Below are positions 20,701 to 38,932 of a stretch of 45,172 nt of DNA, piece after piece; the stretch's first letter is position 1, and the number at the start of each line of letters is the position of its first letter. A model generated the notes under the pieces. It ran no database searches. It saw only the letters and a program-made list of their open reading frames with translations, and was not told where the DNA came from. The stretch lies in the NCBI RefSeq assembly GCF_000315625.1, contig NW_005434524.1, forward strand, positions 1 through 45,172. Direction: 5' to 3'. The DNA comes from Guillardia theta CCMP2712 (taxonomy: Eukaryota > Protista > Cryptophyta). The translations under genes were made by a program, and so were the position numbers.

Positions 20701-21119
20701 CGGGCGACTGGTCCGTCCACGAAGCCTACAAGTTGATAAGTTTCGTAAATCTGCAAGAATGTCAATCATTCAAAAGAGGATGAAGTAGTTTTCAACACGA
20801 AACAGGAGTTGAAATCCAATCAGTTCATCGCAAAACCCTAGAGTTTGCGAAGAAGCAATGGTTCATCTGAAATCTTCGATATCATATCATCCCATCTCAC
20901 CTGGCAGACATTTTTCAATATGTCTATGTCTACTTCAAATCCCCAGTGCACATTGACATCTCTCATGCTCTTGGTGAAAACACATGTCGCGTTCATTCTT
21001 GCAATGAGCGTACTCGTCCGCTTCTGAGGCTCTCTGTTCGACGATCTCCTCCTTTCCACTCTGCGATGCAAACCGAACGTGAAGGGACTGGCTGTAGGAT
21101 CCACACCTGCTGCAAGCAC
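17799..21119 (-). CDS. RAD5: RAD5/HLTF-like SNF2 helicase with RING finger (multi-exon; 5' end approximate)
   Basis: GGILADDMGLG, WWRVILDEAHWIKN, RWCLTATPLQN, RING CVVC..CCHCFC..C..CPLC, SVVFS, EPWWN..QAMHRLHRIGQ; GT-AG introns at 18084-18144 and 19139-19231 restore frame. Confidence 0.88.
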
Positions 21120-21356
21120 TTAGATGAAGACAGGAAGGAGAAGACAAACGGACGGAGACTTGGCTGACGGTGAAAGCAATCGGGAGCTGCAACGGCTGCT
21201 TGCATTAGCATGGAGTTTGAATAAGAAAGAAGAGAAGTAAAGGAGTAAAGTATGGAGAATGGAGCCACGAGGAGGTGGTGGAGGATTAGGAAAGAGGAGT
21301 AGAAGGGAGGAGGAAGGAGGAAGGAGGAGGAAGGAGGAGGAAGGAGGAGGAGGAAG

Positions 21357-22187
21357 NNNNNNNNNNNNNNNNNNNNNNNNNNNNNNNNNNNNNNNNNNNN
21401 NNNNNNNNNNNNNNNNNNNNNNNNNNNNNNNNNNNNNNNNNNNNNNNNNNNNNNNNNNNNNNNNNNNNNNNNNNNNNNNNNNNNNNNNNNNNNNNNNNNN
21501 NNNNNNNNNNNNNNNNNNNNNNNNNNNNNNNNNNNNNNNNNNNNNNNNNNNNNNNNNNNNNNNNNNNNNNNNNNNNNNNNNNNNNNNNNNNNNNNNNNNN
21601 NNNNNNNNNNNNNNNNNNNNNNNNNNNNNNNNNNNNNNNNNNNNNNNNNNNNNNNNNNNNNNNNNNNNNNNNNNNNNNNNNNNNNNNNNNNNNNNNNNNN
21701 NNNNNNNNNNNNNNNNNNNNNNNNNNNNNNNNNNNNNNNNNNNNNNNNNNNNNNNNNNNNNNNNNNNNNNNNNNNNNNNNNNNNNNNNNNNNNNNNNNNN
21801 NNNNNNNNNNNNNNNNNNNNNNNNNNNNNNNNNNNNNNNNNNNNNNNNNNNNNNNNNNNNNNNNNNNNNNNNNNNNNNNNNNNNNNNNNNNNNNNNNNNN
21901 NNNNNNNNNNNNNNNNNNNNNNNNNNNNNNNNNNNNNNNNNNNNNNNNNNNNNNNNNNNNNNNNNNNNNNNNNNNNNNNNNNNNNNNNNNNNNNNNNNNN
22001 NNNNNNNNNNNNNNNNNNNNNNNNNNNNNNNNNNNNNNNNNNNNNNNNNNNNNNNNNNNNNNNNNNNNNNNNNNNNNNNNNNNNNNNNNNNNNNNNNNNN
22101 NNNNNNNNNNNNNNNNNNNNNNNNNNNNNNNNNNNNNNNNNNNNNNNNNNNNNNNNNNNNNNNNNNNNNNNNNNNNNNNNNNNNNNN
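21357..22187. other. Assembly gap (N run) flanked by GGA/GGAA purine microsatellite (~21270-22435)
   Basis: N run with low-complexity flanks. Confidence 0.99.
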
Positions 22188-22649
22188 GGGGGGAGGAAGA
22201 GGAGGGGGGAGGAGCAGGAGCAGGAAGGATGAGGAGGAGGATGAGGATGAGGGAGAGAAGCAGGAAGGAGCAGGAGCAGGAGCAGGAGCAGGAAGGGGAA
22301 GCAGGAGGAGGAGCAGGAGGAGGAGCAGGAGGAGGAGCAGGAGGAAGGAGTAGGAGGAAGGAGGAAGGAGGAAGGAGGAGGAGGAGGTGGTGGTGGTGAT
22401 GGTGGAGGAGGAGCGAGGAAGGAGGAGGAAGGAAAGCTATCGAAGCAGCAGAGAGGAGCAATCCAAAGGGAGATGAGAAGGAAGCGAGGGAGGATGAACA
22501 GTCACAAGGGCAGAAACAAATACGCACAGCTTCCGAGGAGCTCCGATGAAAATCGAGATCCTTTCCAGGGATTACGAACAGCAGAGAAAGCAATGTTGGC
22601 TGTCTCTTTGGCATCGTCGTCAAGATTGCTGCAGACAGAAAACAAATCA

Positions 22650-23293
22650 TAGGGAGTTAACATGAAAATCTTTCGTCACTTGTATCCGCTGATCTCGCTG
22701 GCTCGTCCAACAGCATGAGACGGGACTTGTTCTGTCACTGACTGGTTTCCTTGGTCGAGATTGCTGATGATCCATCTGCTGCCGTAGCTCACTTGAGACC
22801 ACTGCCAACTCCAACCACCTCACGGCATCCTCGACGTCTCCTTGCGGATCCTGAGCGACAGCCCTCTGCAGTGAAGAGTCAATATGATATGATGGAGTGC
22901 TCTGCAGCGACCTTTGCCGTTGACCTCGATGCTCCCATCTCCATTAGCCGCGTCACTTTCCTCTCCAAATCGTTGCTCATCGCCCCTGATGCGATAAGAT
23001 GAGGGGAGCAGGGAGGGAAAGGAGGGAGAGAAAGGGGAGATTGGGGTGTCAGTAGAACCATCACCTGAGCTGCTCTCCTCGTTATCAGACTGCCAGTCGT
23101 TTCCTCCACCTGAGCTGCTCTCCTCGTTATCAGACTGCCAGTCACTTCCTCCTCTACACGGATGTATGCGACTCCGGAGCTGACAGATCCTGGAGAATGT
23201 GCTGCTGCTACCTCCGACTGCCTGTTGTACCCTTGATTGCAAGGGAGGACAGAGGAGCAGAAGGATGACGATCTTGAGCATCTTCGTGATCAT
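22650..23293 (-). CDS. Spliced gene with signal-peptide-like N-terminus, a 13-aa duplication and a UBA domain (3' extent uncertain)
   Basis: MLKIVILLLLCPP; DWQSDNEESSSG twice; removing two GT-AG introns gives LERKVTRLMEMGASRSTAKRAVAQDPQGDVEDAVRWL, a UBA-like pattern. Confidence 0.55.
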
Positions 23294-25039: not shown

Positions 25040-25095
25040 CTAAACCTTCACTAAACCCTAAACCCTAAACCTTCACTAAACCCTAAACCCTAAAC
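25040..25095. repeat. Interstitial telomeric tract with a variant unit, as a 25-bp duplication (CTAAACCTTCACTAAACCCTAAACC)x2
   Basis: Direct observation. Confidence 0.9.
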
Positions 25096-26623
25096 TCTCA
25101 TCCTGGCATCTCATCCTCCCATCTCATCCTCGCATCCCCTTGCGGTTTGTCTTGCTTCACACAGTCCCACCGATACTTCCACATTCCAAATCCTAGAGAT
25201 CCGGATCCTCTTTCATGACGAAATCAACATCCCACCAGCTTTAGATTGTGCTGCTGTGACGAGCACTACCGACTTCTTCCAAGTTGAGGCCGCAAGAAAA
25301 GGCTTGGCGAGACTTCCATGACCTCCATTCATACTGTGCACGAGACACAACGAAGTCTTCATGACATGCGGGAGGTCGCAGTCCTGGGTCGCGCAGAGAA
25401 CACATGTCGCAGAAACGTTAGTGTCGGACAGCAATGAGGATCAAACAACCGCAGTGGATTCCCCCAAATCACAAACCATAGATACAGCGGGGAATTTGCT
25501 CAAGAACAGAAGAGGAAGTTACGCCACTGTTACAGATGCAGTTACCCTCAGTCCGCATAATGGATCCATTGATCAGGACGTTAACTTCTCCGGCAGGACG
25601 AAAGAAAAACTTGCTTTTGGGGAAATGGAATAAGTACATCATCGCATTCATATGTTCTTAATTATTTGGTATTTCCATTCGTGGTACAACAAACAAAACT
25701 GAATTCGAGATTCATCATAAGAAAACGCACGGTTTGGCTGCTTGCTCAAGAAACGCAGCAAACACTGACTGCTGGTCTGTTTGGGTCTGACGAACTGACC
25801 AATTCGAATTCCTGTCAAAACCAATCAATGCGACCCTTGCACCTCATCAAGCAATTATTCACCTGAGATGTTGCAACATCCTTGCGGAAATTTTGCAACC
25901 GTTCTGCAAGTTTAATTGTCGCATACTGCATGGGAGTGTAGCACAATTGAGTTCTTACCTACATCAAAATTCGAATGATCTCCATGTGCCCGTTTCCAAT
26001 GCAAAGTGCAAAGGGGTCTGCAAGCAATATTTATGTGAAAGTGCAAGCAATATTTATATGAAGTGATCCACCTCCCCGTCTTGGTTTTGGGCATTGATGT
26101 TTGCTCCAGATTCCAGCAACAAATTTACAACTGCTTGCTGCCCAACACAGCACGCATAATGTGGTGGCCTCCTGCCACACGACCATCAAAGCACTTCTAA
26201 CTCCCTCAGACAGCACAAACCCAATAGCTGCTGGTGGAGTTAGAAGTGCTTTGATAGCTTCTCTTCCGCATCTCACTTGTCGCAGGACGGGCCAACGCAC
26301 CCAAGCATCAAACAAGACTGGTCGAGGAGGTGAAGAGCGGCTGCCGGAATCTTGAGACCTGCCTCAGGTCGGAGGGGATCAGAAACCTCGAATGCAACTC
26401 TATGCTAAACGCCGGAGAGAAGAACGGCTAGGCTTACGGAGAAGACGACTCTAAGGTAGGAGAAAACGATGATAAGGAGAAGTAGGAGAAGTGAGAGAGA
26501 AAAACTGCAATTTTGCGGTTTATGTAGAACTGATGATTCCTGTCCCCTCCCTCTTTTCACCTTCACCTCAGCCTGACACTAGGAGCCGGAGAGGATCTGG
26601 CGGAGAATGTTCCTGCTCACCGG

Positions 26624-29600
26624 TTAGGAGGAGAGCAAGGAGAACAAGTAAGCAGAGCAAGCAAACCTGCTCTCGTGTTCGAGCAACACGCAGACGGCAT
26701 GGTAGAACATCGCCTGCATGCTGTCTGCGCCCGTTCCGTCCTCGAGGAGCTCGTTCACCTCCCGCGGAATCTCTAGGATGGTCGTCTGCTCATCCCCCAC
26801 CTGAGCATGGAAGTGTCCCGAAACCTTTTGCTGGACGAAGTTGGTGAGGCCGAAGCAAGCCCCTGGGTCGAGGATCTTGTAAACATCGTCAAGCCGCTTC
26901 AGCTTGACTTGTCCCGTGAACACAAAGAAGATGCTTGCCGTCCTGTGCGCCAGGGCGAACTCGCTCCTTCGCTCCAGCCGATGGACTTTGCCGTACCTGT
27001 CCAGAATGCTTGCGAACGAGGGCTGCCGGTGAGCTGCCTCGGTACTGGCGCTGGCCTTGTGATCGGCGATGTTGCGCTTGAGGAGGCTGAGGACCTGGAA
27101 GGCACGATGACAGGAGGCGAAGGCCAGCTCGAAGGTGTTGTAGAGGGTAGAGGAACCCTCACAATCTGTGGAGACGCGAATGATAAGCGTGGTCTGCTGG
27201 TAGCGATCCTTGAACGCAACGCTCTCCATGGCAGCGACAGGCATCAGCTGCGATTGCAAGTCGATGACGGGGCCGTAGATGAGCGGGTCTAGGATCACAT
27301 ACCTGTTGAAGAACATGATCCTCATCTTAACCTCCTTCCGCAGCTCCGGGCGTCTCAGCTTGCACTTGAACGTGCGCAGCAGTCGCTCCGTCAGCGGCAG
27401 CCCAAAAGTACGGATGCAGCTCGTACGGAGTCGCTCCTTGGCGTCCTGCTCGGGGAGGATAGAACGATCGTTGAGTGCCTTGAGGGAGGCCATCCGGATC
27501 ATTTCCATCTGGATGCGATCAAGTCGTATGGCAAGCAGGATGCTCAGGGACTTGTAAAAGCTGCTCGTCTCCCTTGCTGTCCGTAGCCCCTCGATGGAAA
27601 TCTTCTCGACATCTATCTCCTCGCTTCCACTCTTCTCTCTGTTGCTCCTCAGCAGCTCGCGATCTCTCGCCTGGTCATTTTCCTGGCTGCCCTGCGACTC
27701 TTGCGACACGATCAGCTTCTGGATGAAAAACGTCTTGTAAGGCTTGGGTGACGAGATTCGCGTCAGGTCCTGCTGGTTGCTCTCCATTCTGCTCGATAAC
27801 TTCGAAGCCTGCTGGATCTGCGAGATCCACATCGCTCTTTCTTGCTCGTTTAATGCCGCGCAGTAGAAGGTGCGATTCTGCATGACGTCTTGGATCGCGA
27901 AGGCCCACAGGCACTCGCTGTCCGCATGCTCCGACACATGGCAGTCGCGCAGGTTAATATTTCCCTTCGCTACCTCATTGCCTTTGAACGCACCCTCACT
28001 CGAGTAGTACTCCAGCTGCTGCCCCTTGAGCACAAAGTAGCGGTCCTTCCAGGACAAATTGTACCAGCCTCGCTTCTTGAGGACGCCTCTGCGAGAATGT
28101 GAGGAACGGAAGCAGATCAACAGGTACACAGAGAGGAGATATAGACTCACTGGTGGACGGAGCGAAAGTAGGAGATGTGCAAAAGACTCGTGGTCTGCCC
28201 TTCTGCTTGACTCGCTTGCACTGTACGGCCTCGCTTAACCAGGCAGATTACCTGAGTCTTGTCCTCGCGAGCTCGCAGACTCATGAAGGTCCCGTCGTAG
28301 AGGAAGTCAGCACCGAGCACCACGGAGCCGGAGCCGAAGATGCACAATATGGGTACACGGACGTTCTGCCTGTTGTTTTCATCGGGGATGCTGTTGCCGA
28401 GGCTGTGAAACTGCACCATCACATTGTTGTCATCTTTCAAGACTCCCTCCACCGCCCCCTTCTGGATGAAGTAGACGTAGTCGTTGCGGAAAGACTCTTT
28501 GGTGAGGTACTCGCCCTTGCGCAGCGTCATGGAGATTGCGAACTCGTTGTGGGTGAACATCAGCTGGAAGGACCTGATCTGAGCCTCAATCAGTCGGTCG
28601 CTTGATGCCCCGTCGAAGAACAGCAGCTTTGTTTCGGGCTTGAGATGAACTTGCAGGTGAAATGTTTGGTCAAACATCTGATTCGAGCTGTCCTTATGCA
28701 ACATGTCCACGTTACGCTTGTGGAAAACAATCAAATCTCTCCCTTCGTAGAAAGATGTATGGAACATGACGAAGAAAGCGAGTTTGCGCTTGGAGTTCAT
28801 CCCAACATTCTGGAAGACACAGGGCAACGTCAAGCATGAAACTTAAAGACAGCGAGAGAGGAGGAGAGCAGAGAGGGAGAGAACAGAGAGGAAGGATAGC
28901 AGAGGGGGAGGAGAGGAGAGTGGGAGGAGAGGAGAGCGGGAGGAGAGGAGAGCGGGAGGAGAGGAGAGCGGGAGGAGAGCAGAAGGGGATGAAAGCTCAC
29001 CGGATGGATAAAGAAGTCTATTCTCACATCTGCCCAGATTAAGACATCCGTGCTAAGCTCAATATAGACTCCATATGGCTCAGACTCCGACTTTGTTTTC
29101 ATGACCTCTTGCGGGGGAATCAAGTCGAGAGAGTCCAACACGACTGTCCTCTGACATTTCACGACGTAACTGCAGGCCATTGGTTAACAGCCGTCGAGTC
29201 GACCACGAGAGACAGACAGGGTTGGAGGGGGGAAAGGAGGGGCAGCAAGAGCAGCAAGAGTCCGAGAGAGAGAGAGCGAAAGACAGGAGGGCGGGAGCAG
29301 AAGACTTAAAGCAGGATCACCTCATGCGTACCGACTTGTACTTTTCCATGAAGCGATTGCAGCGGAGCGTCAGTTTCTCCATGAAGCGGTACTTGACACT
29401 CCAGGGGTCTACCCCACTGTACAGCACGGCTTCCAGGTAGTAGACATAGCGCAACTGACTAGGGCCCTGCACACCTTGGTTGTGCTTCACATTGCGTCTG
29501 CCTACCCCATCTTCGATATCCTCGTCCAGCCCATCCTCAGGGATATAGTCTTGCGTTCGCCGGTACGTGAAGAGCTCCAGAGCGTCAAGAGCGCATCTCC

Positions 29601-31787
29601 TATGCCCAGTCCACATGAGGAGGCCGGCGATCATCACACCAGTCCTCCCCTTCCCTCCTTTGCAGTGCACTGCGATCGTGTTCTGACGGTCTCTCGACAT
29701 CCAAGCACACGACTCCTGACACATGAAGATGAGCTCCGACAAGAGCGGTGGCGCGTGATCTTCGAAGGGAATTCTCTGCACTTGGTTGAACAGCAGCTGG
29801 GGATGGTAATTCCCCATGACGCCGTCCGATGAGTTGTAGGTGTCGCACAAGTTGAAGATGAAGAACTTTCCATAGTGCCGCTGAGACAGAAAGCGAGAGA
29901 CCATATGGATGTCGTTTCGAAAGGCAGTGTGTCCTCCGAAAGCAGGAGCCGACATGGCGATGATCCTGTCCGTTATGTAGGTGAGATCCAAGTTGTAGCC
30001 ATGCTTCTTGTATCTCCTCTTGTTCTGTGGAAGCGTGTTAGACAAAAGTTATTCAGCTCATCATCTCTACCTGAGAAACTGCCTTCCTCAGCTTCTTGCT
30101 CACTGCCCCACTCAGCATTCTCGCTCTTCTCACGGTAATCAGAACGCGAACGAATCGCATGACCATGGCGATTCTAGAAAAGACGCGCAGGCTTGTGGCA
30201 GTACTCTTGGTGGACTGGAGGCTGCTAGCTACCCCGCTTTGAGATTCAAAGATTTGCTTGACGACCTAGGAGAAATCAAACTTCAGCAACACGTTTGAAA
30301 GCTACTCATTCAAGCCTCACCAGCACTCCAATGCTCAACCAAACCACGAAGAAGTCAAAGATGTTCCACATGTTGCTCCAAAAGCGCTTGCGTTGAGCAA
30401 TTTGCCTCAAGCTGAGCTCAAGGAGGAAGAGCGACATAACTGTGAAGTTGACGGCAGTTTGCCAGGGCTGCTCAGAGTCAGTCGAGTAGTAGAACGTGTA
30501 GACCAAGATGTTGGAGAGATCCAACATAACGAGGCCCAAAACCATAATGTTGACCCACATGGACTCCATCGCCTTTTCTAGTCTTTCTCGCCAGTACAAC
30601 TCGGAAGGCTCCTCGTCATAGTCGATGTCTTTCTCGTCGGCATCGGCGAAGAGATCGTCTACCTCGGGCTCAACTTGCAGTTCCGGAGTCCGAGAAGGGA
30701 ATTTCAAGTTCACTTGAGACCCTCTCCTTTCTGGGTCCGGAGGGCGCTCGGCACGTTTGTATGAGAACGAGCCTGATAAAGAGTGACTGCTTTTGTGAAA
30801 GAAATATCCAGCTGAGATGGAGGAGAGACGGTGCAACATAGAGATGCTGATTTCCCGACTCTCAGGTCGAGACTCACACATTGAAAGAGACTTAGACAAT
30901 GTAGGAGGATACCAAGATCGATGCGTGGGCAACATCTCCAGTTCCACATCGACCTCACACGGAAGGCCGTCCTTTCCCATCACAGGATCTCCCGAAGTTG
31001 TGCATAGAACAAAGGTCAAGTGCTTTGCAGTCTCGACGAGCGAGCACAAAACAAGCAGATCCACAGAAACCTTGCCCACATAGTCATTCGAGCTCAAGCG
31101 GTCCCAATCGAAGCATTCGATCAACAAGCCAATGCCACATGACGCCCCTTCACTCACTTGCAAGCTCTTTGCGAACTCGATATGCAGCTCATGAACAAAA
31201 AACTCGAAGCTTTCACGATACGAGTACTCGTAGACATTCTTAGCCACTTGAGTCGATCTCTTCTGCTGATCGAACGTAAGAACGAGGAAAGGATCACATC
31301 TGCCGTCCGCGTCCATTTGAGGAAGATGTCGAACAGCGAGTTTTCTTGCATGAAGCATCATATGTTTTGGAGGTGGACCAGCTCTTTGCTCCGGGACGTG
31401 TCCATCCTCAAGAACATCACTCTGTTCCACGTAGCGGGCGTCCGTGAAGGGATAAATAAAATCTCCGGGAGACAGAACCTCAGTCCCCTGCAGCTCCCTT
31501 CTGTCTTCCATGTGCGAAGGAGACATGTTGTCATCGGAGTCCTGGATACGAGCCCGGGTAGGGGCTGGGGTCGCAGAGAGGGAGTTGGTGTCCAAAACTA
31601 TTTCTCCACGGATGTTTCCTTCAAGATTGAAGGTCCGACTGAGGTCTCCTCCATCCACCAGGATCCGTTCTTCGGCCGCCAGAACGAGACCCGAAGGTTG
31701 AGCATGTGTAGTTTCTGGACATTGAGCATATCCTTCAGCCTCCTTACGCCACTCCGAGGCTCCCTCAGAAGCGACAACGATGTGCAT
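26624..31787 (-). CDS. Multi-exon voltage-sensing phosphatase (VSP/TPTE-like): C2, S1-S4 voltage sensor, PTEN-type phosphatase, PTEN-C2, cNMP-like, PH, GRAM-like, cNMP-like
   Basis: C2 (LPQMDADGRCDPF..FDWDRLSSNDYVG); S2 FLLELSLR; S3 WNIFDFFVV; S4 exon 30071-30265 LRVFSRIAMVMRFVRVLITVRRAR; spliced linker LRKAVSQ/NKRRYKKHGYNLDLTYIT; FEDH; P-loop HCKGGKGRTG; PSQLRYVYY; PH GVLKKRG..WKDRYFVL..W; gene ends and linkage of the 3' exons approximate. Confidence 0.85.
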
Positions 31788-32977
31788 GTGCTCATCGTTG
31801 TCGAGGGCCTAAAGTTAACTTACAACCCACCCCTATCTATAAGTACGATACTGGTACCCCCACATACCACCTCTAATACGGTCCAAAAGACCCGGTCATG
31901 TGCCACCCTTACCCCTGGCTAGAAAATAATTTCACAGATTGCTACCCGCCGTCTTTTCCGTCGCACCCACGCCAGTGGCAGTCCTTGGAGTCCTTCCGAG
32001 GGTCCTTGAGAGGCCTCAGGCCCGGCCTGCTTGCTAGCATCACCTCTCACGATCATCAGTATCGTGAGACCCCTGCCTCCAACCCCAAGGTAGTTGCAGG
32101 GTCCTCAGCCGCCAAGTTTGTTCCGTGTAAAGAACAACGGCAGGTCCGGGGCCAAACAGTCACCTCATCGTTGCTGTCGTTATCGTTGTCGTTCTCGTGT
32201 AGCACATGAAACATGATTTGAATCAAATCATTTCAACGAATGCATCAAACTTCAACATTCGAATGACCCGGTCTATTGCGCTACTCCACACTTGTAATCT
32301 CAACATTGCTTGCCATGAGCATACGTGGAGACGAGTGTAGGTAGGTAGAGCGCGCTTGCGCTGCTTTCAACCCGTCATGCCCCCGCCCATGCACACATTC
32401 TCCCCTCTCCCTCCTCCGGCGCTTCACCTGTAAACGATGATAGAAGAGTCTGTATGTGAGAGTGGAGGAACCTTTCTTGATTCCTTGCCACATCCACGTG
32501 TCAGGCTTGTAGCTTACCGCGTCTAGCTCAGCTCGCCTACCCAACCAGCGGACACATGCGATGCCGCCTCCTCCCCTCATCTCACCCCACCATCACCATC
32601 GCAGACAGGGCAAGATAAGACACAGGCAGGCCTTGCTACCGCTCCTGTCCTGATCTCGCCTCGCACTTCTCGTCCTGCTCAGCCTCGCAGCACAGGGGGA
32701 GGGAGGGGGGAGCTGCCAGGTCCCAACGTGCCCCCGCGTGTTTTGGCGTGTCGGGGTCGAGGGGGCCCATCTTGATAAAGGCTTCCCCCCCCTCCCCCCC
32801 TGTCTCGTGACTTGCTATATTTAGCATCGAATCTATGACCCACCCCCTGGAGCAATGCCACTACCCCCTGTAGGGGCCCGCCTCATGGGAGAGACAGCGC
32901 GAGTGTATTATATCATCGTACACTCTCTCGTACTCGTGTGGAGCATAGGCTGCCGACCTCTGCGCCGACTCGCTCCT

Positions 32978-33732
32978 TCACTCGCCCACGTAGACCAGCA
33001 GGGGCGCGATCAGCTGCAAGGCTAGGTACGCGTCGCGATCTCGCTTCACTCCGAAGACCGCCCCGCTCCACTTGTGAAGACACGCTTTCACCTGCTCCCT
33101 CCAGTCAGCTCCTCTCCCCTCCCCTGGGCCTCCGCTCTCGCGGCCTTGGTGCTCACTCTGAGGTCCTCAAGAGGTACGGTCAGGGCGGTGTTGATCTCCG
33201 GCTCATAGGAGGGGAAGAACCGCTCGCACAACCGCTCGTACGTCCTCACCCGGTCTATTGCCCTCCTCATCTTGAAGCTCCAGACCGTGTGCACGACTCG
33301 GAAGCCCTCGAGGCCCCTCACGTCCCTGAGGACCCTCTGGATCCTTCTGGCTACTGCCCTCAGAGTGGAGCGGGCGGAGGAGGCGGAGCGAGCTCCGACC
33401 ACGACCATGCTGCCGCTCTCGTACACCTTGACGACGGTGGAGTGCAGCGGGAAGCGCAGGGTCACAGAGCGAGCGTTGGTGAGATCTCCCCCGTACTGGG
33501 AGTTTCTCAGCCTGGACGCCAGCAGCTTGGTGTCGAGGCGACGAGGCCCGGCCAGCCTCGCGCGGGCTACGACATTGACCCTTGCCGACGAGACGAGCGC
33601 ACAGTCGCAGCGAGGAAGAGCAGAGATCAACCCGTCAGACTCGTCTCCATCAGCCACGAGGGCGACTTACGTTCTAAGGTCCGAGAAGTTTTCATCAAGG
33701 GTCATGGTCTCAACATTGCTTGTCATGAGCAT
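32978..33732 (-). CDS. Divergent TATA-binding-protein-like factor, copy 1 (exons 33732-33671, 33580-33157, 33091-32978; 199 aa)
   Basis: Introns GTAAGT..AAG (90 nt) and GTGAGC..CTGAC..CAG (65 nt); the spliced product aligns over both TBP repeats: VNVVA, LRNSQY, VYESGSMVVVGARS, FRVVHTV, SYEPEI, VFGVK..AYLALQLIAPLL. Confidence 0.85.
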
Positions 33733-34351
33733 ACGTGGAGACGAGTGTAGGTAGGTAGAGCGCGCTTGCGCTGCTTTCAACCCGTCATGCCCCCGCCCAT
33801 GCACACATTCTCCCCTCTCCCTCCTCCGGCGCTTCACCTGTAAACGATGATAGAAGAGTCTGTATGTGAGAGTGGAGGAACCTTTCTTGATTCCTTGCCA
33901 CATCCACGTGTCAGGCTTGTAGCTTACCGCGTCTAGCTCAGCTCGCCTACCCAACCAGCGGACACATGCGATGCCGCCTCCTCCCCTCATCTCACCCCAC
34001 CATCACCATCGCAGACAGGGCAAGATAAGACACAGGCAGGCCTTGCTACCGCTCCTGTCCTGATCTCGCCTCGCACTTCTCGTCCTGCTCAGCCTCGCAG
34101 CACAGGGGGAGGGAGGGGGGAGCTGCCAGGTCCCAACGTGCCCCCGCGTGTTTTGGTTCCCCCCCCTCCCCCCCTGTCTCGTGACTTGCTATATTTAGCA
34201 TCGAATCTATGACCCACCCCCTGGAGCAATGCCACTACCCCCTGTAGGGGCCCGCCTCATGGGAGAGACAGAGAGAGTGTATTATATCATCGTACACTCT
34301 CTCGTACTCGTGTGGAGCATAGGCTGCCGACCTCTGCGCCGACTCGCTCCT

Positions 34352-35106
34352 TCACTCGCCCACGTAGACCAGCAGGGGCGCGATCAGCTGCAAGGCTAGG
34401 TACGCGTCGCGATCTCGCTTCACTCCGAAGACCGCCCCGCTCCGCTTGTGAAGACACGCTTTCACCTGCTCCCTCCAGTCAGCTCCTCTCCCCTCCCCTG
34501 GGCCTCCGCTCTCGCGGCCTTGGTGCTCACTCTGAGGTCCTCAAGAGGTACGGTCAGGGCGGTGTTGATCTCCGGCTCATAGGAGGGGAAGAACCGCTCG
34601 CACAACCGCTCGTACGTCCTCACCCGGTCTATTGCCCTCCTCATCTTGAAGCTCCAGACCGTGTGCACGACTCGGAAGCCCTCGAGGCCCCTCACGTCCC
34701 TGAGGACCCTCTGGATCCTTCTGGCTACTGCCCTCAGAGTGGAGCGGGCGGAGGAGGCGGAGCGAGCTCCGACCACGACCATGCTGCCGCTCTCGTACAC
34801 CTTGACGACGGTGGAGTGCAGCGGGAAGCGCAGGGTCACAGAGCGAGCGTTGGTGAGATCTCCCCCGTACTGGGAGTTTCTCAGCCTGGACGCCAGCAGC
34901 TTGGTGTCGAGGCGACGAGGCCCGGCCAGCCTCGCGCGGGCTACGACATTGACCCTTGCCGACGAGACGAGCGCACAGTCGCAGCGAGGAAGAGCAGAGA
35001 TCAACCCGTCAGACTCGTCTCCATCAGCCACGAGGGCGACTTACGTTCTAAGGTCCGAGAAGTTTTCATCAAGGGTCATGGTCTCAACATTGCTTGTCAT
35101 GAGCAT
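34352..35106 (-). CDS. Divergent TBP-like factor, copy 2
   Basis: As copy 1; HKR instead of HKW in exon 3. Confidence 0.85.
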
Positions 35107-35772
35107 ACGTGGAGACGAGTGTAGGTAGGTAGAGCGCGCTTGCGCTGCTTTCAACCCGTCATGCCCCCGCCCATGCACACATTCTCCCCTCTCCCTCCTC
35201 CGGCGCTTCACCTGTAAACGATGATAGAAGAGTCTGTATGTGAGAGTGGAGGAACCTTTCTTGATTCCTTGCCACATCCACGTGTCAGGCTTGTAGCTTA
35301 CCGCGTCTAGCTCAGCTCGCCTACCCAACCAGCGGACACATGCGATGCCGCCTCCTCCCCTCATCTCACCCCACCATCACCATCGCAGACAGGGCAAGAT
35401 AAGACACAGGCAGGCCTTGCTACCGCTCCTGTCCTGATCTCGCCTCGCACTTCTCGTCCTGCTCAGCCTCGCAGCACAGGGGGAGGGAGGTGGGAGCTGC
35501 CAGGTCCCAACGTGCCCCCGCGTGTTTTGGCGTGTCGGGGTCGAGGGGGCCCATCTTGATAAAGGCTTCCCCCCCCTCCCCCCCTGTCTCGTGACTTGCT
35601 ATATTTAGCATCGAATCTATGACCCACCCCCTGGAGCAATGCCACTACCCCCTGTAGGGGCCCGCCTCATGGGAGAGACAGAGAGAGAGTAGCGCGAGTG
35701 TATTATATCATCGTACACTCTCTCGTACTCGTGTGGAGCATAGGCTGCCGACCTCTGCGCCGACTCGCTCCT

Positions 35773-36527
35773 TCACTCGCCCACGTAGACCAGCAGGGGC
35801 GCGATCAGCTGCAAGGCTAGGTACGCGTCGCGATCTCGCTTCACTCCGAAGACCGCCCCGCTCCGCTTGTGAAGACACGCTTTCACCTGCTCCCTCCAGT
35901 CAGCTCCTCTCCCCTCCCCTGGGCCTCCGCTCTCGCGGCCTTGGTGCTCACTCTGAGGTCCTCAAGAGGTACGGTCAGGGCGGTGTTGATCTCCGGCTCA
36001 TAGGAGGGGAAGAACCGCTCGCACAACCGCTCGTACGTCCTCACCCGGTCTATTGCCCTCCTCATCTTGAAGCTCCAGACCGTGTGCACGACTCGGAAGC
36101 CCTCGAGGCCCCTCACGTCCCTGAGGACCCTCTGGATCCTTCTGGCTACTGCCCTCAGAGTGGAGCGGGCGGAGGAGGCGGAGCGAGCTCCGACCACGAC
36201 CATGCTGCCGCTCTCGTACACCTTGACGACGGTGGAGTGCAGCGGGAAGCGCAGGGTCACAGAGCGAGCGTTGGTGAGATCTCCCCCGTACTGGGAGTTT
36301 CTCAGCCTGGACGCCAGCAGCTTGGTGTCGAGGCGACGAGGCCCGGCCAGCCTCGCGCGGGCTACGACATTGACCCTTGCCGACGAGACGAGCGCACAGT
36401 CGCAGCGAGGAAGAGCAGAGATCAACCCGTCAGACTCGTCTCCATCAGCCACGAGGGCGACTTACGTTCTAAGGTCCGAGAAGATTTCATCAAGGGTCAT
36501 GGTCTCAACATTGCTTGTCATGAGCAT
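35773..36527 (-). CDS. Divergent TBP-like factor, copy 3
   Basis: As copy 2; DEIF instead of DENF in exon 1. Confidence 0.85.
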
Positions 36528-37173
36528 ACGTGGAGACGAGTGTAGGTAGGTAGAGCGCGCTTGCGCTGCTTTCAACCCGTCATGCCCCCGCCCATGCACA
36601 CATTCTCCCCTCTCCCTCCTCCGGCGCTTCACCTGTAAACGATGATAGAAGAGTCTGTATGTGAGAGTGGAGGAACCTTTCTTGATTCCTTGCCACATCC
36701 ACGTGTCAGGCTTGTAGCTTACCGCGTCTAGCTCAGCTCGCCTACCCAACCAGCGGACACATGCGATGCCGCCTCCTCCCCTCATCTCACCCCACCATCA
36801 CCATCGCAGACAGGGCAAGATAAGACACAGGCAGGCCTTGCTACCGCTCCTGTCCTGATCTCGCCTCGCACTTCTCGTCCTGCTCAGCCTCGCAAGACAC
36901 AGGCAGGCCTTGCTACCGCTCCTGTCCTGATCTCGCCTCGCACTTCTCGTCCTGCTCAGCCTCGCAGCACAGGGGGAGGGAGGGGGGAGCTGCCAGGTCC
37001 CAACGTGCCCCCGCGTGTTTTGGCGTGTCGGGGTCGAGGGGGCCCATCTTGATAAAGGCTTCCCCCCCCTCCCCCCCTGTCTCGTGACTTGCTATATTTA
37101 GCATCGAATCTATGACACCTCTCTCGTACTCGTGTGGAGCATAGGCTGCCGACCTCTGCGCCGACTCGCTCCT

Positions 37174-37928
37174 TCACTCGCCCACGTAGACCAGCAGGGG
37201 CGCGATCAGCTGCAAGGCTAGGTACGCGTCGCGATCTCGCTTCACTCCGAAGACCGCCCCGCTCCGCTTGTGAAGACACGCTTTCACCTGCTCCCTCCAG
37301 TCAGCTCCTCTCCCCTCCCCTGGGCCTCCGCTCTCGCGGCCTTGGTGCTCACTCTGAGGTCCTCAAGAGGTACGGTCAGGGCGGTGTTGATCTCCGGCTC
37401 ATAGGAGGGGAAGAACCGCTCGCACAACCGCTCGTACGTCCTCACCCGGTCTATTGCCCTCCTCATCTTGAAGCTCCAGACCGTGTGCACGACTCGGAAG
37501 CCCTCGAGGCCCCTCACGTCCCTGAGGACCCTCTGGATCCTTCTGGCTACTGCCCTCAGAGTGGAGCGGGCGGAGGAGGCGGAGCGAGCTCCGACCACGA
37601 CCATGCTGCCGCTCTCGTACACCTTGACGACGGTGGAGTGCAGCGGGAAGCGCAGGGTCACAGAGCGAGCGTTGGTGAGATCTCCCCCGTACTGGGAGTT
37701 TCTCAGCCTGGACGCCAGCAGCTTGGTGTCGAGGCGACGAGGCCCGGCCAGCCTCGCGCGGGCTACGACATTGACCCTTGCCGACGAGACGAGCGCACAG
37801 TCGCAGCGAGGAAGAGCAGAGATCAACCCGTCAGACTCGTCTCCATCAGCCACGAGGGCGACTTACGTTCTAAGGTCCGAGAAGATTTCATCAAGGGTCA
37901 TGGTCTCAACATTGCTTGTCATGAGCAT
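37174..37928 (-). CDS. Divergent TBP-like factor, copy 4
   Basis: As copy 3; shared upstream sequence ends at ~38167. Confidence 0.85.
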
Positions 37929-38932
37929 ACGTGGAGACGAGTGTAGGTAGGTAGAGCGCGCTTGCGCTGCTTTCAACCCGTCATGCCCCCGCCCATGCAC
38001 ACACTCTCCCCTCTCCCTCCTCCGGCGCTTCACCTGTAAACGATGATAGAAGAGTCTGTATGTGAGAGTGGAGGAACCTTTCTTGATTCCTTGCCACATC
38101 CACGTGTCAGGCTTGTAGCTTACCGCGTCTAGCTCAGCTCGCCTACCCAACCAGCGGACACATGCGAGAAAGGGGAGGAGGTGTGTCACCCGCGGGTCAT
38201 CATGATTCCGATTGAGCGTCATCCCGCCATTCTTCTGTCTTGTGCCTTGTGTCTTGTGTCTTGTGCCTTCTGCCTCCTTCTGCCTTGATCTTGCTCTTTG
38301 TGCCCTCACCTCTGTCCTTTTCCTCCTTCCTGCTTCTTTTTTGATCACTTCCCATTGATTTCTTTCTCCCTGGTGTGGTCCCCCTCCTCCTCAACCCCTG
38401 CCTCCGCTCCCCTTCTGCTTCATTTCTCTGTCACTTGTTGCGTCCTCCTCCTCCTATCACTGTACCATCACCACACAGAGAGAAGAAGCGGCTGCAGGGG
38501 GGAGTCGATGGTCTAGAGCAGGATGAGGACGAGGATGACAAGAGAGAGGCAGAGAAAGAGTGCCAATGTTCGACAAGTCAATCTCGTCCAAGGACGCAAA
38601 CATATCATACTTGCCTCGAGACAAAGGAGCAAGCCACTTTGACAGTGAGGAGAGGGAAGAAGAGAAGGAGACAGTGGTGATCGAGGAGAATGTTTCAGAC
38701 AGAATCAAGCAACCCATGCTTTAAGGCAGCAGCGATGAAAGTTCAATTGCTGCTCGTCTTCTGTGTGAACAACAAAAGATAAAAGTATCTTGTGGCTGTT
38801 CTGTCGCTAATTGATCGACGAGGAGAGATCGAATTTGTGATTTACATTAAAACGAATCCCTAAAAAACAAGAAAACCCTATAAACAGTATGAGAAAGCTC
38901 ATGATGTGAAAAACAATCTGTTGGACATGCGC

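What the first reader, a model, noticed from the sequence alone, without database searches (positions are those of the whole stretch)
26624..31787. Non-animal voltage-sensing phosphatase with an expanded multi-sensor architecture
Seen: after manual splicing, S1-S4 with an Arg-rich S4 joins the PTEN domain through LRKAVSQNKRRY, and the P-loop is HCKGGKGR. Known: that linker and the Gly (PTEN has HCKAGKGR) are the signatures of Ci-VSP/TPTE, which consist only of VSD, phosphatase and C2. Here an N-terminal Asp-containing C2 and C-terminal cNMP-like, PH, GRAM-like and second cNMP-like domains are added. The cNMP-like domains lack the canonical GE..R cassette, so ligand binding is doubtful. Inference: a single enzyme integrating voltage, Ca2+ and lipid signals in an alga; of evolutionary and tool-building interest.
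Basis: partly seen in the sequence, partly recalled or inferred. Interest (0 to 1): 0.82.

Follow-up and report, generated by a model that had tools for sequence, protein, structure and literature searches.

The report
Cryptophyte voltage-sensing phosphatase with extra domains
The alga Guillardia theta expresses one spliced gene that joins a membrane voltage sensor to a PTEN-type lipid phosphatase, as in animal voltage-sensing phosphatases, and adds a calcium-type C2 domain in front and PH, PH-like and degenerate cyclic-nucleotide-binding-like domains behind.

Summary
On the minus strand at 26624-31787 lies a six-exon gene of Guillardia theta CCMP2712. Five GT..AG introns are seen in spliced public RNA contigs, and the joined frame is open for 1552 codons.

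Domain order:
- Ca2+-type C2
- S1-S4 voltage sensor
- 19-residue linker with NKRRY
- PTEN-like phosphatase with HCKGGKGR
- PTEN-type C2
- CNBD-like β-roll
- PH
- a second PH-fold (GRAM-like) domain
- CNBD-like 2

The public annotation holds only a 219-aa fragment (GUITHDRAFT_80690).

The reading is partly right. It is a member of the voltage-sensing phosphatase clade. In a careful tree, VSD-coupled phosphatase domains separate from PTENs on one branch (99/98). Gly versus Ala in the P-loop tracks the presence of a voltage sensor. However, NKRRY is shared with PTEN and is not a VSP signature.

"Non-animal" is not unique. Similar uncharacterised proteins occur in Cafeteria, Balamuthia, Paulinella, a diplonemid and other cryptophytes. 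G. theta itself has at least 10 such loci.

What is new is the accessory-domain layout, which cryptophyte relatives share in part. Both CNBD-like domains lack the cNMP-contact residues here; a Teleaulax relative keeps them in the second one.

The scan found this family before on other DNA of this genome (s1-448778, s1-437174). Voltage control itself is inferred, not shown.

The parts
26624..31787 (-). Coding region of the whole gene: 6 exons, 1552 codons plus stop. Exons 30321-31787, 30071-30265, 29321-30024, 29001-29169, 28151-28809, 26624-28088.
   Evidence: Spliced RNA contigs give all five introns. The joined frame is open with no internal stop.
31056..31352 (-). N-terminal C2 domain (aa 146-244). 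Asp sits at all five Ca2+-ligand positions of synaptotagmin-1 C2A/C2B (MD, CDP, FD, WD, ND).
   Evidence: Pfam C2 E 1.7e-10. Alignment to synaptotagmin-1. In the paralogue model the C2 matches Ca2+-bound C2 domains at Z about 17-18.
30321..30575 (-). Voltage-sensor helices S1-S3 (aa about 405-489). S1 carries an Asp, S2 has F-x-x-E-x-x-x-R (FLLELSLR), S3 has N-x-x-D (NIFDFF).
   Evidence: Pfam Ion_trans E 6.9e-7. Alignment with family members and with animal and protist VSPs.
30113..30190 (-). S4 (aa 515-540). Arg at 520, 526, 529, 535 and 538 lie on one three-residue register, interrupted by M523 and I532. R516 and R536 are additional.
   Evidence: This exon is 92% identical to the C14 paralogue, against 71-75% for the accessory exons.
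30004..30112 (-). S4-to-phosphatase linker with the basic phosphoinositide-binding motif (SGAVSKKLRKAVSQ|NKRRYKK). It is split by the 46-nt intron 30025-30070.
   Evidence: Joint 30024|30071 in runs X1 and X2. Linker length is within one residue of cnidarian and mouse VSPs.
29371..30024 (-). PTEN-like phosphatase domain. P-loop HCKGGKGR at 29644-29667 (Cys675, Arg681). The general-acid Asp is in PFEDHAPP (Asp643).
   Evidence: Best solved relative is Ci-VSP, E 4.8e-37, then TPTE2, then PTEN. The tree places it in the VSD-coupled clade.
28630..29370 (-). PTEN-type C2 domain. It spreads over the end of exon 3, exon 4 (29001-29169) and the start of exon 5, and is interrupted by introns 29170-29320 and 28810-29000.
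   Evidence: Pfam PTEN_C2 29.3 bits against cut-off 27.1. Relatives score E 1e-10 to 4e-14.
28195..28572 (-). CNBD-like domain 1, β-roll (aa about 925-1050). It has no Gly-Glu and no cassette Arg.
   Evidence: Pfam cNMP_binding E 8.2e-4, below cut-off. A family profile against PDB hits PKA-R at 8.9e-5 and PKG at 2e-4.
27788..28087 (-). PH domain (aa 1066-1165). It is inserted between the CNBD-like β-roll and its C-terminal helices. At this position it occurs only in this gene and its C14 paralogue.
   Evidence: Pfam PH E 1.1e-16. Nearest solved PH domains are IPCEF1, CERT and FAPP1. Absent from Teleaulax and metagenome relatives.
27035..27451 (-). Second PH-superfold domain, 'GRAM-like' (aa about 1278-1416). 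It is conserved across the family.
   Evidence: AF2 model residues 213-351 have pLDDT 75-87. PH-fold matches at Z 13-14, including the Lam6 GRAM/PH-like domain 5yqr at Z 13.0. No Pfam GRAM hit.
26663..26995 (-). CNBD-like domain 2 (aa about 1430-1540). The cassette reads FGLTNFVQQKVSG, so both Glu and Arg are lost.
   Evidence: Pfam cNMP_binding E 3.2e-3 here, but E 4.5e-12 in the Teleaulax relative, whose cassette GEVNFALERSAG is intact. Foldseek hits to CooA, CAP and PKG.

Best explanation
This is a full-length, expressed member of the voltage-sensing phosphatase (VSP) family in the cryptophyte Guillardia theta.

Proposed core mechanism (inferred):
- A four-helix voltage sensor (S1-S4) sits in a membrane.
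- On depolarisation the Arg-bearing S4 moves. Through a short basic linker (KKLRKAVSQNKRRYKK) that binds phosphoinositides, it switches on a PTEN-fold phosphatase (Cys675 in HCKGGKGR, Asp643, Arg681) backed by a PTEN-type C2.
- The enzyme would then remove phosphates from plasma-membrane phosphoinositides.

Additions around this core:
- A cytosolic N-terminal C2 has all five Ca2+-ligand Asp residues.
- A C-terminal train holds a CNBD-like β-roll, a PH domain, a second PH-fold domain and a second CNBD-like domain.
- The most likely roles are Ca2+- and lipid-dependent membrane docking or autoregulation of the catalytic region.
- The CNBD-like domains of this gene have lost the cNMP-contact residues. 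They probably act as structural or regulatory modules, not as cNMP receptors.

Shown: gene structure, expression, domain identities, catalytic and sensor residues, clade membership.

Inferred: voltage dependence, substrates, the roles of the added domains.
For: One transcript:
- Spliced contigs cover 26570-30024 and 30071 to beyond 32000, and meet at the joint 30024|30071.
- The frame is open for 1552 codons.
- A G. theta paralogue has C2-VSD-phosphatase in a single 722-codon exon.
- Transcript-derived relatives are single ORFs of 1412-1716 aa.

Phosphatase:
- Ci-VSP is the best solved match, E 4.8e-37, ahead of PTEN at 3e-31.
- The Teleaulax relative aligns to TPTE2/Dr-VSP from S2 to the C2, E 4.7e-45.
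- The AF2 model of the paralogue (pLDDT 75.7) matches the Ci-VSP catalytic domain at Z 23.4 and rmsd 1.6 Å over 212 columns.

Clade:
- In the careful tree, 46 VSD-coupled domains separate from 21 PTENs on one branch, support 99/98, in 100% of bootstrap trees.
- The P-loop Gly/Ala state changes only twice on the 129-row tree.

Sensor:
- Conserved S1 Asp, S2 FxxExxxR, S3 NxxD and S4 Arg register.
- S4-to-NKRRY spacing is within one residue of cnidarian and mouse VSPs.
- The S4 and phosphatase exons are 92% and 96% identical between paralogues whose other exons are 71-75% identical.

Accessory domains.
Against: - No functional data exist.
- The S4 register is interrupted by Met523 and Ile532.
- Taken alone, the voltage sensor of the family matches Nav/Cav/NavAb sensors in PDB (best domain 20.9 bits) and does not reach Ci-VSD at E <= 1. 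It scores about the same against Balamuthia and coral VSP sensors, 23-24 bits.
- The residue at the Ci-VSP Glu411 position is Gln here, while most family members have Glu or Asp. Substrate preference may therefore differ.
- The S4-to-phosphatase junction rests on 22-letter overhangs.
- The E6 structure model is poor overall (pLDDT 57).
- The tree holds only the query's 150 nearest cluster representatives and has no outgroup.
Confidence: 0.75

Rival explanations
1. Independent (convergent) fusion. A cryptophyte ancestor joined a Nav/Cav-like voltage sensor to a PTEN-family phosphatase on its own. The protein would then work like a VSP without sharing the fusion event with animal VSPs.
For: The isolated sensor of a G. 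theta paralogue hits Nav1.5, Cav1.1 and bacterial Nav sensors in PDB, and no VSP sensor at E <= 1. The WNIFDF motif in S3 is channel-like.
Against: - Phosphatase domains of all VSD-coupled proteins form one side of a 99/98 branch against PTEN.
- They share the P-loop Gly.
- S4-to-NKRRY spacing is conserved to within one residue.
- The same sensor scores 23-24 bits against Balamuthia and coral VSP sensors, no worse than against channels.
Confidence: 0.12
2. The sensor is only a membrane anchor. The S1-S4 module no longer responds to physiological voltages, and the phosphatase is governed by Ca2+ (C2) and lipids (PH domains).
For: - Two hydrophobic residues interrupt the S4 Arg register.
- Many regulatory domains have been added.
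- From general knowledge, voltage-driven catalysis has been hard to show for some mammalian TPTE proteins.
Against: - The charge-transfer centre (S2 Phe and Glu, S3 Asp) and five in-register Arg are kept across a diverged family.
- The S4 exon is among the best conserved parts between paralogues.
- The AF2 model gives one continuous S4-linker helix, residues 441-482 at pLDDT 84-93, as expected for a coupled sensor.
Confidence: 0.1
3. Mis-joined neighbouring genes. The locus would hold two or more genes (C2-VSD protein, PTEN-like enzyme, PH/CNBD protein) and the single long model would be an artefact.
For: The public annotation has only a 219-aa partial protein here. The key junction has a 22-letter overhang.
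Against: - Canonical, frame-preserving junctions are seen in spliced contigs of independent studies. One 3073-nt contig spans phosphatase to CNBD-like 2 and another spans S4 to the 5' UTR.
- Collinear architecture recurs in at least 5 paralogues.
- Complete transcripts of other cryptophytes show the same architecture.
Confidence: 0.03

Closest known systems
Animal voltage-sensing phosphatases (Ci-VSP, Dr-VSP/TPTE2, mouse TPTE)
   Same: - S1-S4 sensor without a pore.
- S4 joined by an 18-19-residue basic linker (..SQNKRRY..) to a PTEN-fold phosphatase with HCKGGKGR, followed by a PTEN-type C2.
- The phosphatase domain is 38-48% identical and lies on the same side of the VSP/PTEN branch.
   Different: - About three times longer (1552 aa against about 510-660 aa).
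- Extra N-terminal Ca2+-type C2 and a C-terminal CNBD-like / PH / PH-like / CNBD-like train.
- Gln instead of Glu at the Ci-VSP Glu411 position.
- The S4 register has two hydrophobic gaps.
- No functional data.
PTEN
   Same: Phosphatase plus C2 fold, the N-terminal basic NKRRY motif, the catalytic Cys, Arg and Asp.
   Different: PTEN has no membrane sensor and has Ala in the P-loop (HCKAGKGR). PTENs form the other side of the 99/98 branch.
Uncharacterised protist VSD-phosphatases in databases (Cafeteria roenbergensis KAA0147428, Balamuthia mandrillaris 'tpte2' KAL6075666, Paulinella, Artemidia, choanoflagellates)
   Same: VSD-linker-phosphatase core with HCxGGKGR. They show that the VSP core exists across eukaryotic supergroups.
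   Different: They fall in other clades of the tree and are mostly 470-830 aa. I did not scan these proteins for domains.
Cryptophyte relatives of the same family (Teleaulax amphioxeia EP00802_P000743, 1716 aa; MMETSP and metagenome proteins; G. theta paralogues on contigs C14, C21, C190, C4)
   Same: - Collinear N-terminal region / VSD / phosphatase / PTEN-C2 / CNBD-like / PH-fold / CNBD-like.
- 59-96% identity in the phosphatase domain.
- Clade support 99/97.
   Different: - At this position the PH insertion is found only here and in the C14 paralogue.
- In the C21 paralogues a PH-like match lies downstream of CNBD-like 2.
- Teleaulax keeps an intact cNMP cassette in CNBD 2 and gives no Pfam C2 or PH hit.
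Other voltage-controlled enzymes (for example the Paramecium VSD-bearing adenylyl cyclase, cited in PMC12223298)
   Same: A voltage sensor coupled to a cytosolic enzyme in a protist.
   Different: A different enzyme, and a pore-like module is present. No sequence relation was tested here.

Membership tests
Voltage-sensing phosphatase (VSP/TPTE) | Four-helix voltage sensor with periodic S4 Arg and S1-S3 counter-charges | tested here: met
   - Pfam Ion_trans E 6.9e-7 on S1-S3.
- S1 Asp, S2 FxxExxxR, S3 NxxD, S4 R520/R526/R529/R535/R538 aligned with VSPs.
- Four long helices at pLDDT 83-96 in the paralogue model.
- A fold search of the sensor itself was not obtained, because the hit lists were filled by the phosphatase and C2.
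Voltage-sensing phosphatase (VSP/TPTE) | No pore domain; S4 joined directly to the phosphatase by a short basic linker (phosphoinositide-binding motif) | tested here: met
   19 residues lie between the S4 Arg535 and NKRRY, against 18 in a coral VSP. There are no S5-S6 helices.
Voltage-sensing phosphatase (VSP/TPTE) | PTEN-fold phosphatase with CX5R P-loop HCKGGKGR (Gly where PTEN has Ala) and the general-acid Asp | tested here: met
   HCKGGKGR at 29644-29667 and Asp643 in PFEDHAPP. Among relatives, 47 of 47 VSD-bearing have Gly and 63 of 72 without a VSD have Ala.
Voltage-sensing phosphatase (VSP/TPTE) | Phosphatase domain groups with VSPs, not PTENs, in a phylogeny | tested here: met
   Careful IQ-TREE with 67 rows gives one branch, 99/98, in 100% of bootstrap trees. 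Left out: P0143 (long branch), fragments, two thirds of the PTEN rows. No outgroup. The AU test did not finish.
Voltage-sensing phosphatase (VSP/TPTE) | PTEN-type C2 after the phosphatase | tested here: met
   Pfam PTEN_C2 29.3 bits against cut-off 27.1. Relatives reach up to E 4e-14.
Voltage-sensing phosphatase (VSP/TPTE) | Sensing currents and voltage-dependent phosphoinositide dephosphorylation | not testable with these tools
   Needs electrophysiology and lipid reporters.
Cyclic-nucleotide-binding domain (functional cNMP receptor) | Phosphate-binding cassette with Gly-Glu and Arg-[ST]-Ala | tested here: not met
   - CNBD-like 1 reads FGSGSVVLGADF... and CNBD-like 2 reads FGLTNFVQQKVSG.
- All G. 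theta paralogues examined are likewise degenerate.
- Pfam scores of 19.7 and 17.8 bits are below the 27.5 cut-off.
- The fold and homology are supported.
Ca2+-binding C2 domain (synaptotagmin/PKC type) | Five Asp Ca2+ ligands in loops 1 and 3 | tested here: met
   Alignment to synaptotagmin-1 C2A and C2B shows all five positions are Asp. Ca2+ binding itself was not tested.
PH domain | Pfam PH above the curated cut-off | tested here: met
   61.7 bits against 25.1. The β1 Lys and β2 K-x-R basic residues are present. Lipid specificity was not tested.
GRAM domain | Sequence match to GRAM, and a PH-like fold | tested here: inconclusive
   No Pfam GRAM hit at E <= 1. The fold is PH-like at Z 13-14. 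The Lam6 GRAM/PH-like domain (Z 13.0) is tied with many ordinary PH domains.

The most novel reading that the evidence does not exclude
The protein is a coincidence detector. Catalysis would need depolarisation (VSD) together with a Ca2+ rise (N-terminal C2), and would be shaped by its own lipid products through the PH domains. This would link the electrical signals of a channelrhodopsin-bearing alga to phosphoinositide signalling.

A second part concerns origin. Together with its relatives in five or more eukaryotic supergroups, it would show that the VSD-phosphatase fusion dates to early eukaryotes rather than to the animal lineage.
Probability: 0.25. Interest if true: 0.8.

Novelty: new variant of a known kind. 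Interest (0 to 1): 0.62.

Why it matters
Voltage-sensing phosphatases are the standard example of a voltage-controlled enzyme. They are widely used to deplete PI(4,5)P2 on command and as the basis of voltage indicators. All functional work has been on animal proteins, and the papers I could search extend predictions only to choanoflagellates.

A well-supported, expressed cryptophyte family with the same sensor-linker-enzyme geometry matters in three ways:
- It argues for an early-eukaryotic origin of this coupling.
- It offers natural experiments in how extra inputs (Ca2+, lipids, perhaps cNMP in some species) are wired onto a voltage-driven enzyme.
- It provides new sensor and catalytic modules for tool building.

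It also corrects the public annotation, which has only a 219-aa fragment of this 1552-aa protein.

Tried and rejected
Searches that gave nothing:
- A word-index search with the last exon (487 aa) found nothing in its length band.
- Rfam over the window: no hit.
- Paper searches for non-holozoan VSPs or a Guillardia VSP. They gave only choanoflagellate mentions (PMC3440755, PMC12223298) and an unspecific 'PTEN/TPTE2' orthogroup remark for dinoflagellates (PMC9909359).

Steps that did not finish or did not reach the target:
- The AU test of 'all Gly-type rows are one clade' did not finish in two 300-s runs. I replaced it with a careful tree on a reduced set.
- Fold searches of the 722-aa paralogue model never reached the voltage sensor, because the phosphatase and C2 filled the lists.
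- One script call returned no answer and was repeated.

Ideas considered and rejected:
- Pseudogene: the frame is open and the gene is expressed and spliced.
- RNA contigs coming from the close paralogue on C14: that locus is only 74-78% identical in DNA, and the contigs match this locus with no differences.
- NKRRY as a VSP marker: it is shared with PTEN.

The joined spliced protein:
- I sent it to no search or fold tool. Exons were searched one by one by reference.
- A single-exon G. theta paralogue (L004:49-2214) or database relatives stood in where a contiguous VSD-phosphatase sequence was needed.
- The exons were joined only inside a local script, to check the reading frame.

Full report
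**Source and setting**

The phosphatase exon is 100% identical to GUITHDRAFT_80690, a 219-aa 'partial hypothetical protein' of Guillardia theta CCMP2712. The window is the whole 45-kb contig C150 of that 87-Mb assembly.

**Gene structure and expression**

The long minus-strand ORFs at 30306-31787, 29317-30045, 28147-28833 and 26624-28150, plus a short S4-bearing ORF at 30053-30166, were already suggestive.

Contigs of three public runs from different studies were laid on 26400-32000. They show five joints that are GT..AG on the minus strand: introns 30266-30320, 30025-30070, 29170-29320, 28810-29000 and 28089-28150.
- One 3073-nt contig runs from 26570 through four exons to 30024, plus 22 letters of the S4 exon.
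- A 2223-nt contig runs from 30071 through the first intron to beyond 32000.
- Both match the window without a single substitution. The nearest paralogue (contig C14) is only 74-78% identical in DNA, so the contigs come from this locus.

With these junctions the frame is open from ATG 31787 to the stop at 26624-26626, giving 1552 codons.

Two caveats apply.
- The joint between the S4 exon and the phosphatase exon has only 22 letters on its short side, under the tool's 31-letter rule. It is seen in two studies.
- The RNA contigs have one extra G after 31767, which moves the start to ATG 31795. That start is preceded by an in-frame stop nine codons upstream.

A 2026 raw-read RNA run gave only 12 reads, so expression there is low.

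The joined protein was not sent to any search or fold tool. Exons were searched one at a time by reference, and the exons were joined only in a local script for the frame check.

**Domains of this gene**

Pfam on the exon ORFs gives:
- C2, E 1.7e-10.
- Ion_trans over S1-S3, E 6.9e-7.
- PTP-type phosphatase families.
- PTEN_C2, 29.3 bits against cut-off 27.1.
- PH, E 1.1e-16.
- Two cNMP_binding hits below the cut-off.

N-terminal C2. It aligns to synaptotagmin-1 C2A/C2B with Asp at all five Ca2+-ligand positions.

Voltage sensor. It has the S1 Asp, the S2 F-x-x-E-x-x-x-R motif, the S3 N-x-x-D motif, and an S4 with Arg520, 526, 529, 535 and 538 on one register, with Met523 and Ile532 in between.

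Linker. S4 is followed by SGAVSKKLRKAVSQ|NKRRYKK. The distance from the S4 Arg535 to NKRRY is 19 residues, against 18 in a coral VSP. The whole segment aligns in register with cnidarian, choanoflagellate and mouse VSPs.

Phosphatase. It has HCKGGKGR (Cys675, Arg681) and Asp643. Its best solved relatives are Ci-VSP (E 4.8e-37), TPTE2 and then PTEN.

**Accessory C-terminal modules**

Alignment with relatives (A1; A2) shows the layout:
- a CNBD-like β-roll;
- in this gene only, a PH domain;
- the helices that normally close a CNBD (FYKSLSILLAIRLDRIQMEMIRMASLK);
- a conserved β-rich module;
- a second CNBD-like domain.

CNBD-like 1. A profile of this region finds PKA and PKG regulatory domains in PDB (8.9e-5, 2e-4).

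The β-rich module. An AlphaFold model of the last exon is poor overall (pLDDT 57). It is confident (75-87) for residues 213-351, which form a seven-strand sandwich with a C-terminal helix. This part matches PH-fold domains at Z 13-14. The Lam6 GRAM/PH-like domain is among them but does not stand out. I therefore call it a second PH-fold domain, with 'GRAM-like' unproven.

The true PH domain. Its nearest solved relatives are IPCEF1, CERT and FAPP1.

cNMP contacts. Both CNBD-like domains lack the Gly-Glu and Arg contacts, as do all G. theta paralogues examined. The Teleaulax relative keeps GEVNFALERSAG and scores E 4.5e-12 for cNMP_binding.

**Relatives**

An exhaustive HMMER search with the phosphatase exon found 4451 proteins. 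The nearest 17 or so (59-72% identical) are metagenome and transcriptome proteins. Where long enough, they show C2, Ion_trans, phosphatase, PTEN_C2 and cNMP_binding in the same order.

Named or full-length ones are Teleaulax amphioxeia EP00802_P000743 (1716 aa), an MMETSP transcript (1412 aa) and an ENA protein (1638 aa).

G. theta itself has collinear paralogues on C14, C21 (two copies, head to head), C190 and C4. It has further VSD-phosphatase loci of other types on C12, C29 and C48.

The C21 copies carry C2, VSD and phosphatase in one 722-codon exon. This gave a G. theta sequence with an uninterrupted sensor for modelling.
- The model has pLDDT 75.7.
- It shows a C2, four long helices with S4 and linker as one helix (441-482), and a phosphatase domain.
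- The phosphatase domain superposes on Ci-VSP at rmsd 1.6 Å over 212 columns, Z 23.4.

**Is it a VSP?**

Among the 150 best cluster representatives and the G. theta copies, every one of the 47 sequences with upstream transmembrane helices and an S4-like segment has HCxGGKGR. Of the 72 without them, 63 have HCKAGKGR. Eight of the other nine carry Gly and are N-terminally truncated fragments; the last has a divergent P-loop.

A careful IQ-TREE analysis used LG+C20+F+G4 on 67 rows. P0143 (a long branch), fragments and two thirds of the PTEN rows were left out. It puts all 46 VSD-coupled domains on one side of a branch with support 99/98, found in 100% of bootstrap trees.

The cryptophyte family is a clade (99/97). 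It is sister to an unnamed metagenome group, and then to a second cryptophyte group with a His-rich S4.

Named members of the VSD-coupled side include mouse TPTE, coral and jellyfish TPTE2-like proteins, choanoflagellates, Balamuthia ('tpte2'), Cafeteria, Paulinella and the diplonemid Artemidia.

So the protein meets every sequence-level criterion of the family. The family is much wider than animals.

The weak point is the sensor on its own. It hits Nav/Cav/NavAb sensors in PDB and not Ci-VSD. It scores equally well (23-24 bits) against Balamuthia and coral VSP sensors. Pairwise scores therefore cannot tell whether the sensor shares the fusion event, and a sensor phylogeny is needed.

**Mechanism**

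The conserved charge-transfer centre, the in-register arginines, the VSP-length basic linker and an intact catalytic site make voltage-driven phosphoinositide dephosphorylation the most likely activity (inference).

The N-terminus of a voltage sensor is cytosolic. The Ca2+-type C2 can therefore dock on the same membrane leaflet as the enzyme. The PH and PH-fold domains can do the same in a lipid-dependent way.

These modules may tether, pre-position or autoinhibit the catalytic region. The CNBD-like domains of this gene are unlikely to bind cNMP.

Between this gene and its C14 paralogue, the S4 and phosphatase exons are 92% and 96% identical in protein, and the accessory exons are 71-75% identical. 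This points to the strongest constraint on the sensor-enzyme core.

**Novelty**

No paper in the searchable library describes a VSP outside Holozoa or in Guillardia. Databases already hold such proteins unnamed or auto-labelled.

This scan has reported two other G. theta VSP-type genes on other contigs (s1-448778, s1-437174).

The finding is therefore a new variant of a known kind. It is real, expressed and under-annotated. It is of clear interest for VSP evolution and engineering, but it is not a new category.

Noticed in passing
window 31767: RNA contigs of two studies carry an extra G after this base relative to the genome. In them ATG 31787 runs into a stop, and ATG 31795 becomes the start. 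This is either an assembly error or a strain difference.
   Followed up: partly
window 26453-26581: Joints 26453|26570 and 26453|26581 are GT..AG on the plus strand, in contigs of higher depth (35-220). Another, plus-strand, spliced transcript abuts or overlaps the 3' end of the phosphatase gene.
   Followed up: no
G000 contigs C14:649361-654622, C21:455691-466910, C190:30648-37204, C4:1134484-1138021, C12, C29, C48: G. theta holds at least 10 VSD-phosphatase loci.
- Five collinear paralogues belong to this family.
- Two loci (C12, C29) have a His-rich S4 and HCRGGKGR.
- One locus (C48) has an S4 followed by HCRNGKGR and a second module with HCKAGKGR.
   Followed up: partly
L003/L004 (C21:456752-465353): The two head-to-head C21 paralogues are identical in protein sequence from S4 through most of the phosphatase domain, but diverge elsewhere (87% DNA identity over 1.2 kb). 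This suggests gene conversion of the sensor-enzyme core.
   Followed up: no
P0027, P0031, P0034, P0035, P0042; G000 C12 and C29: A sister clade of VSD-phosphatases, with one member from the cryptophyte Baffinella, has His where S4 normally has Arg (for example VHVAVHFARAL) and has HC[RQ]GGKGR. What a His-rich S4 senses is unexplained.
   Followed up: no
P0018 cluster (P0196): In a 791-aa VSD-phosphatase cluster from metagenomes, one member is labelled as a Promethearchaeia (Asgard) MAG protein. The most likely cause is a eukaryotic contig binned into the MAG.
   Followed up: no
window 31380-31470 (aa about 106-137); L004; P0182 residues 283-310: A short motif, YP[FY]TDA..EQ.D..E.G.PP.PR.GP, precedes the C2 domain and is conserved across the family. 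Its function is unknown.
   Followed up: no
P0182 C-terminus: The Teleaulax relative ends in CCIA, a CaaX-like prenylation motif. The G. theta protein ends in LLSS and has none.
   Followed up: no
window 25040-25095; about 21000-22700; 32938-38350: - An interstitial telomere-like (CTAAACC)n run.
- An assembly gap of about 831 N.
- Four tandem units of about 1.4 kb, each with the same 270-aa ORF.
   Followed up: no
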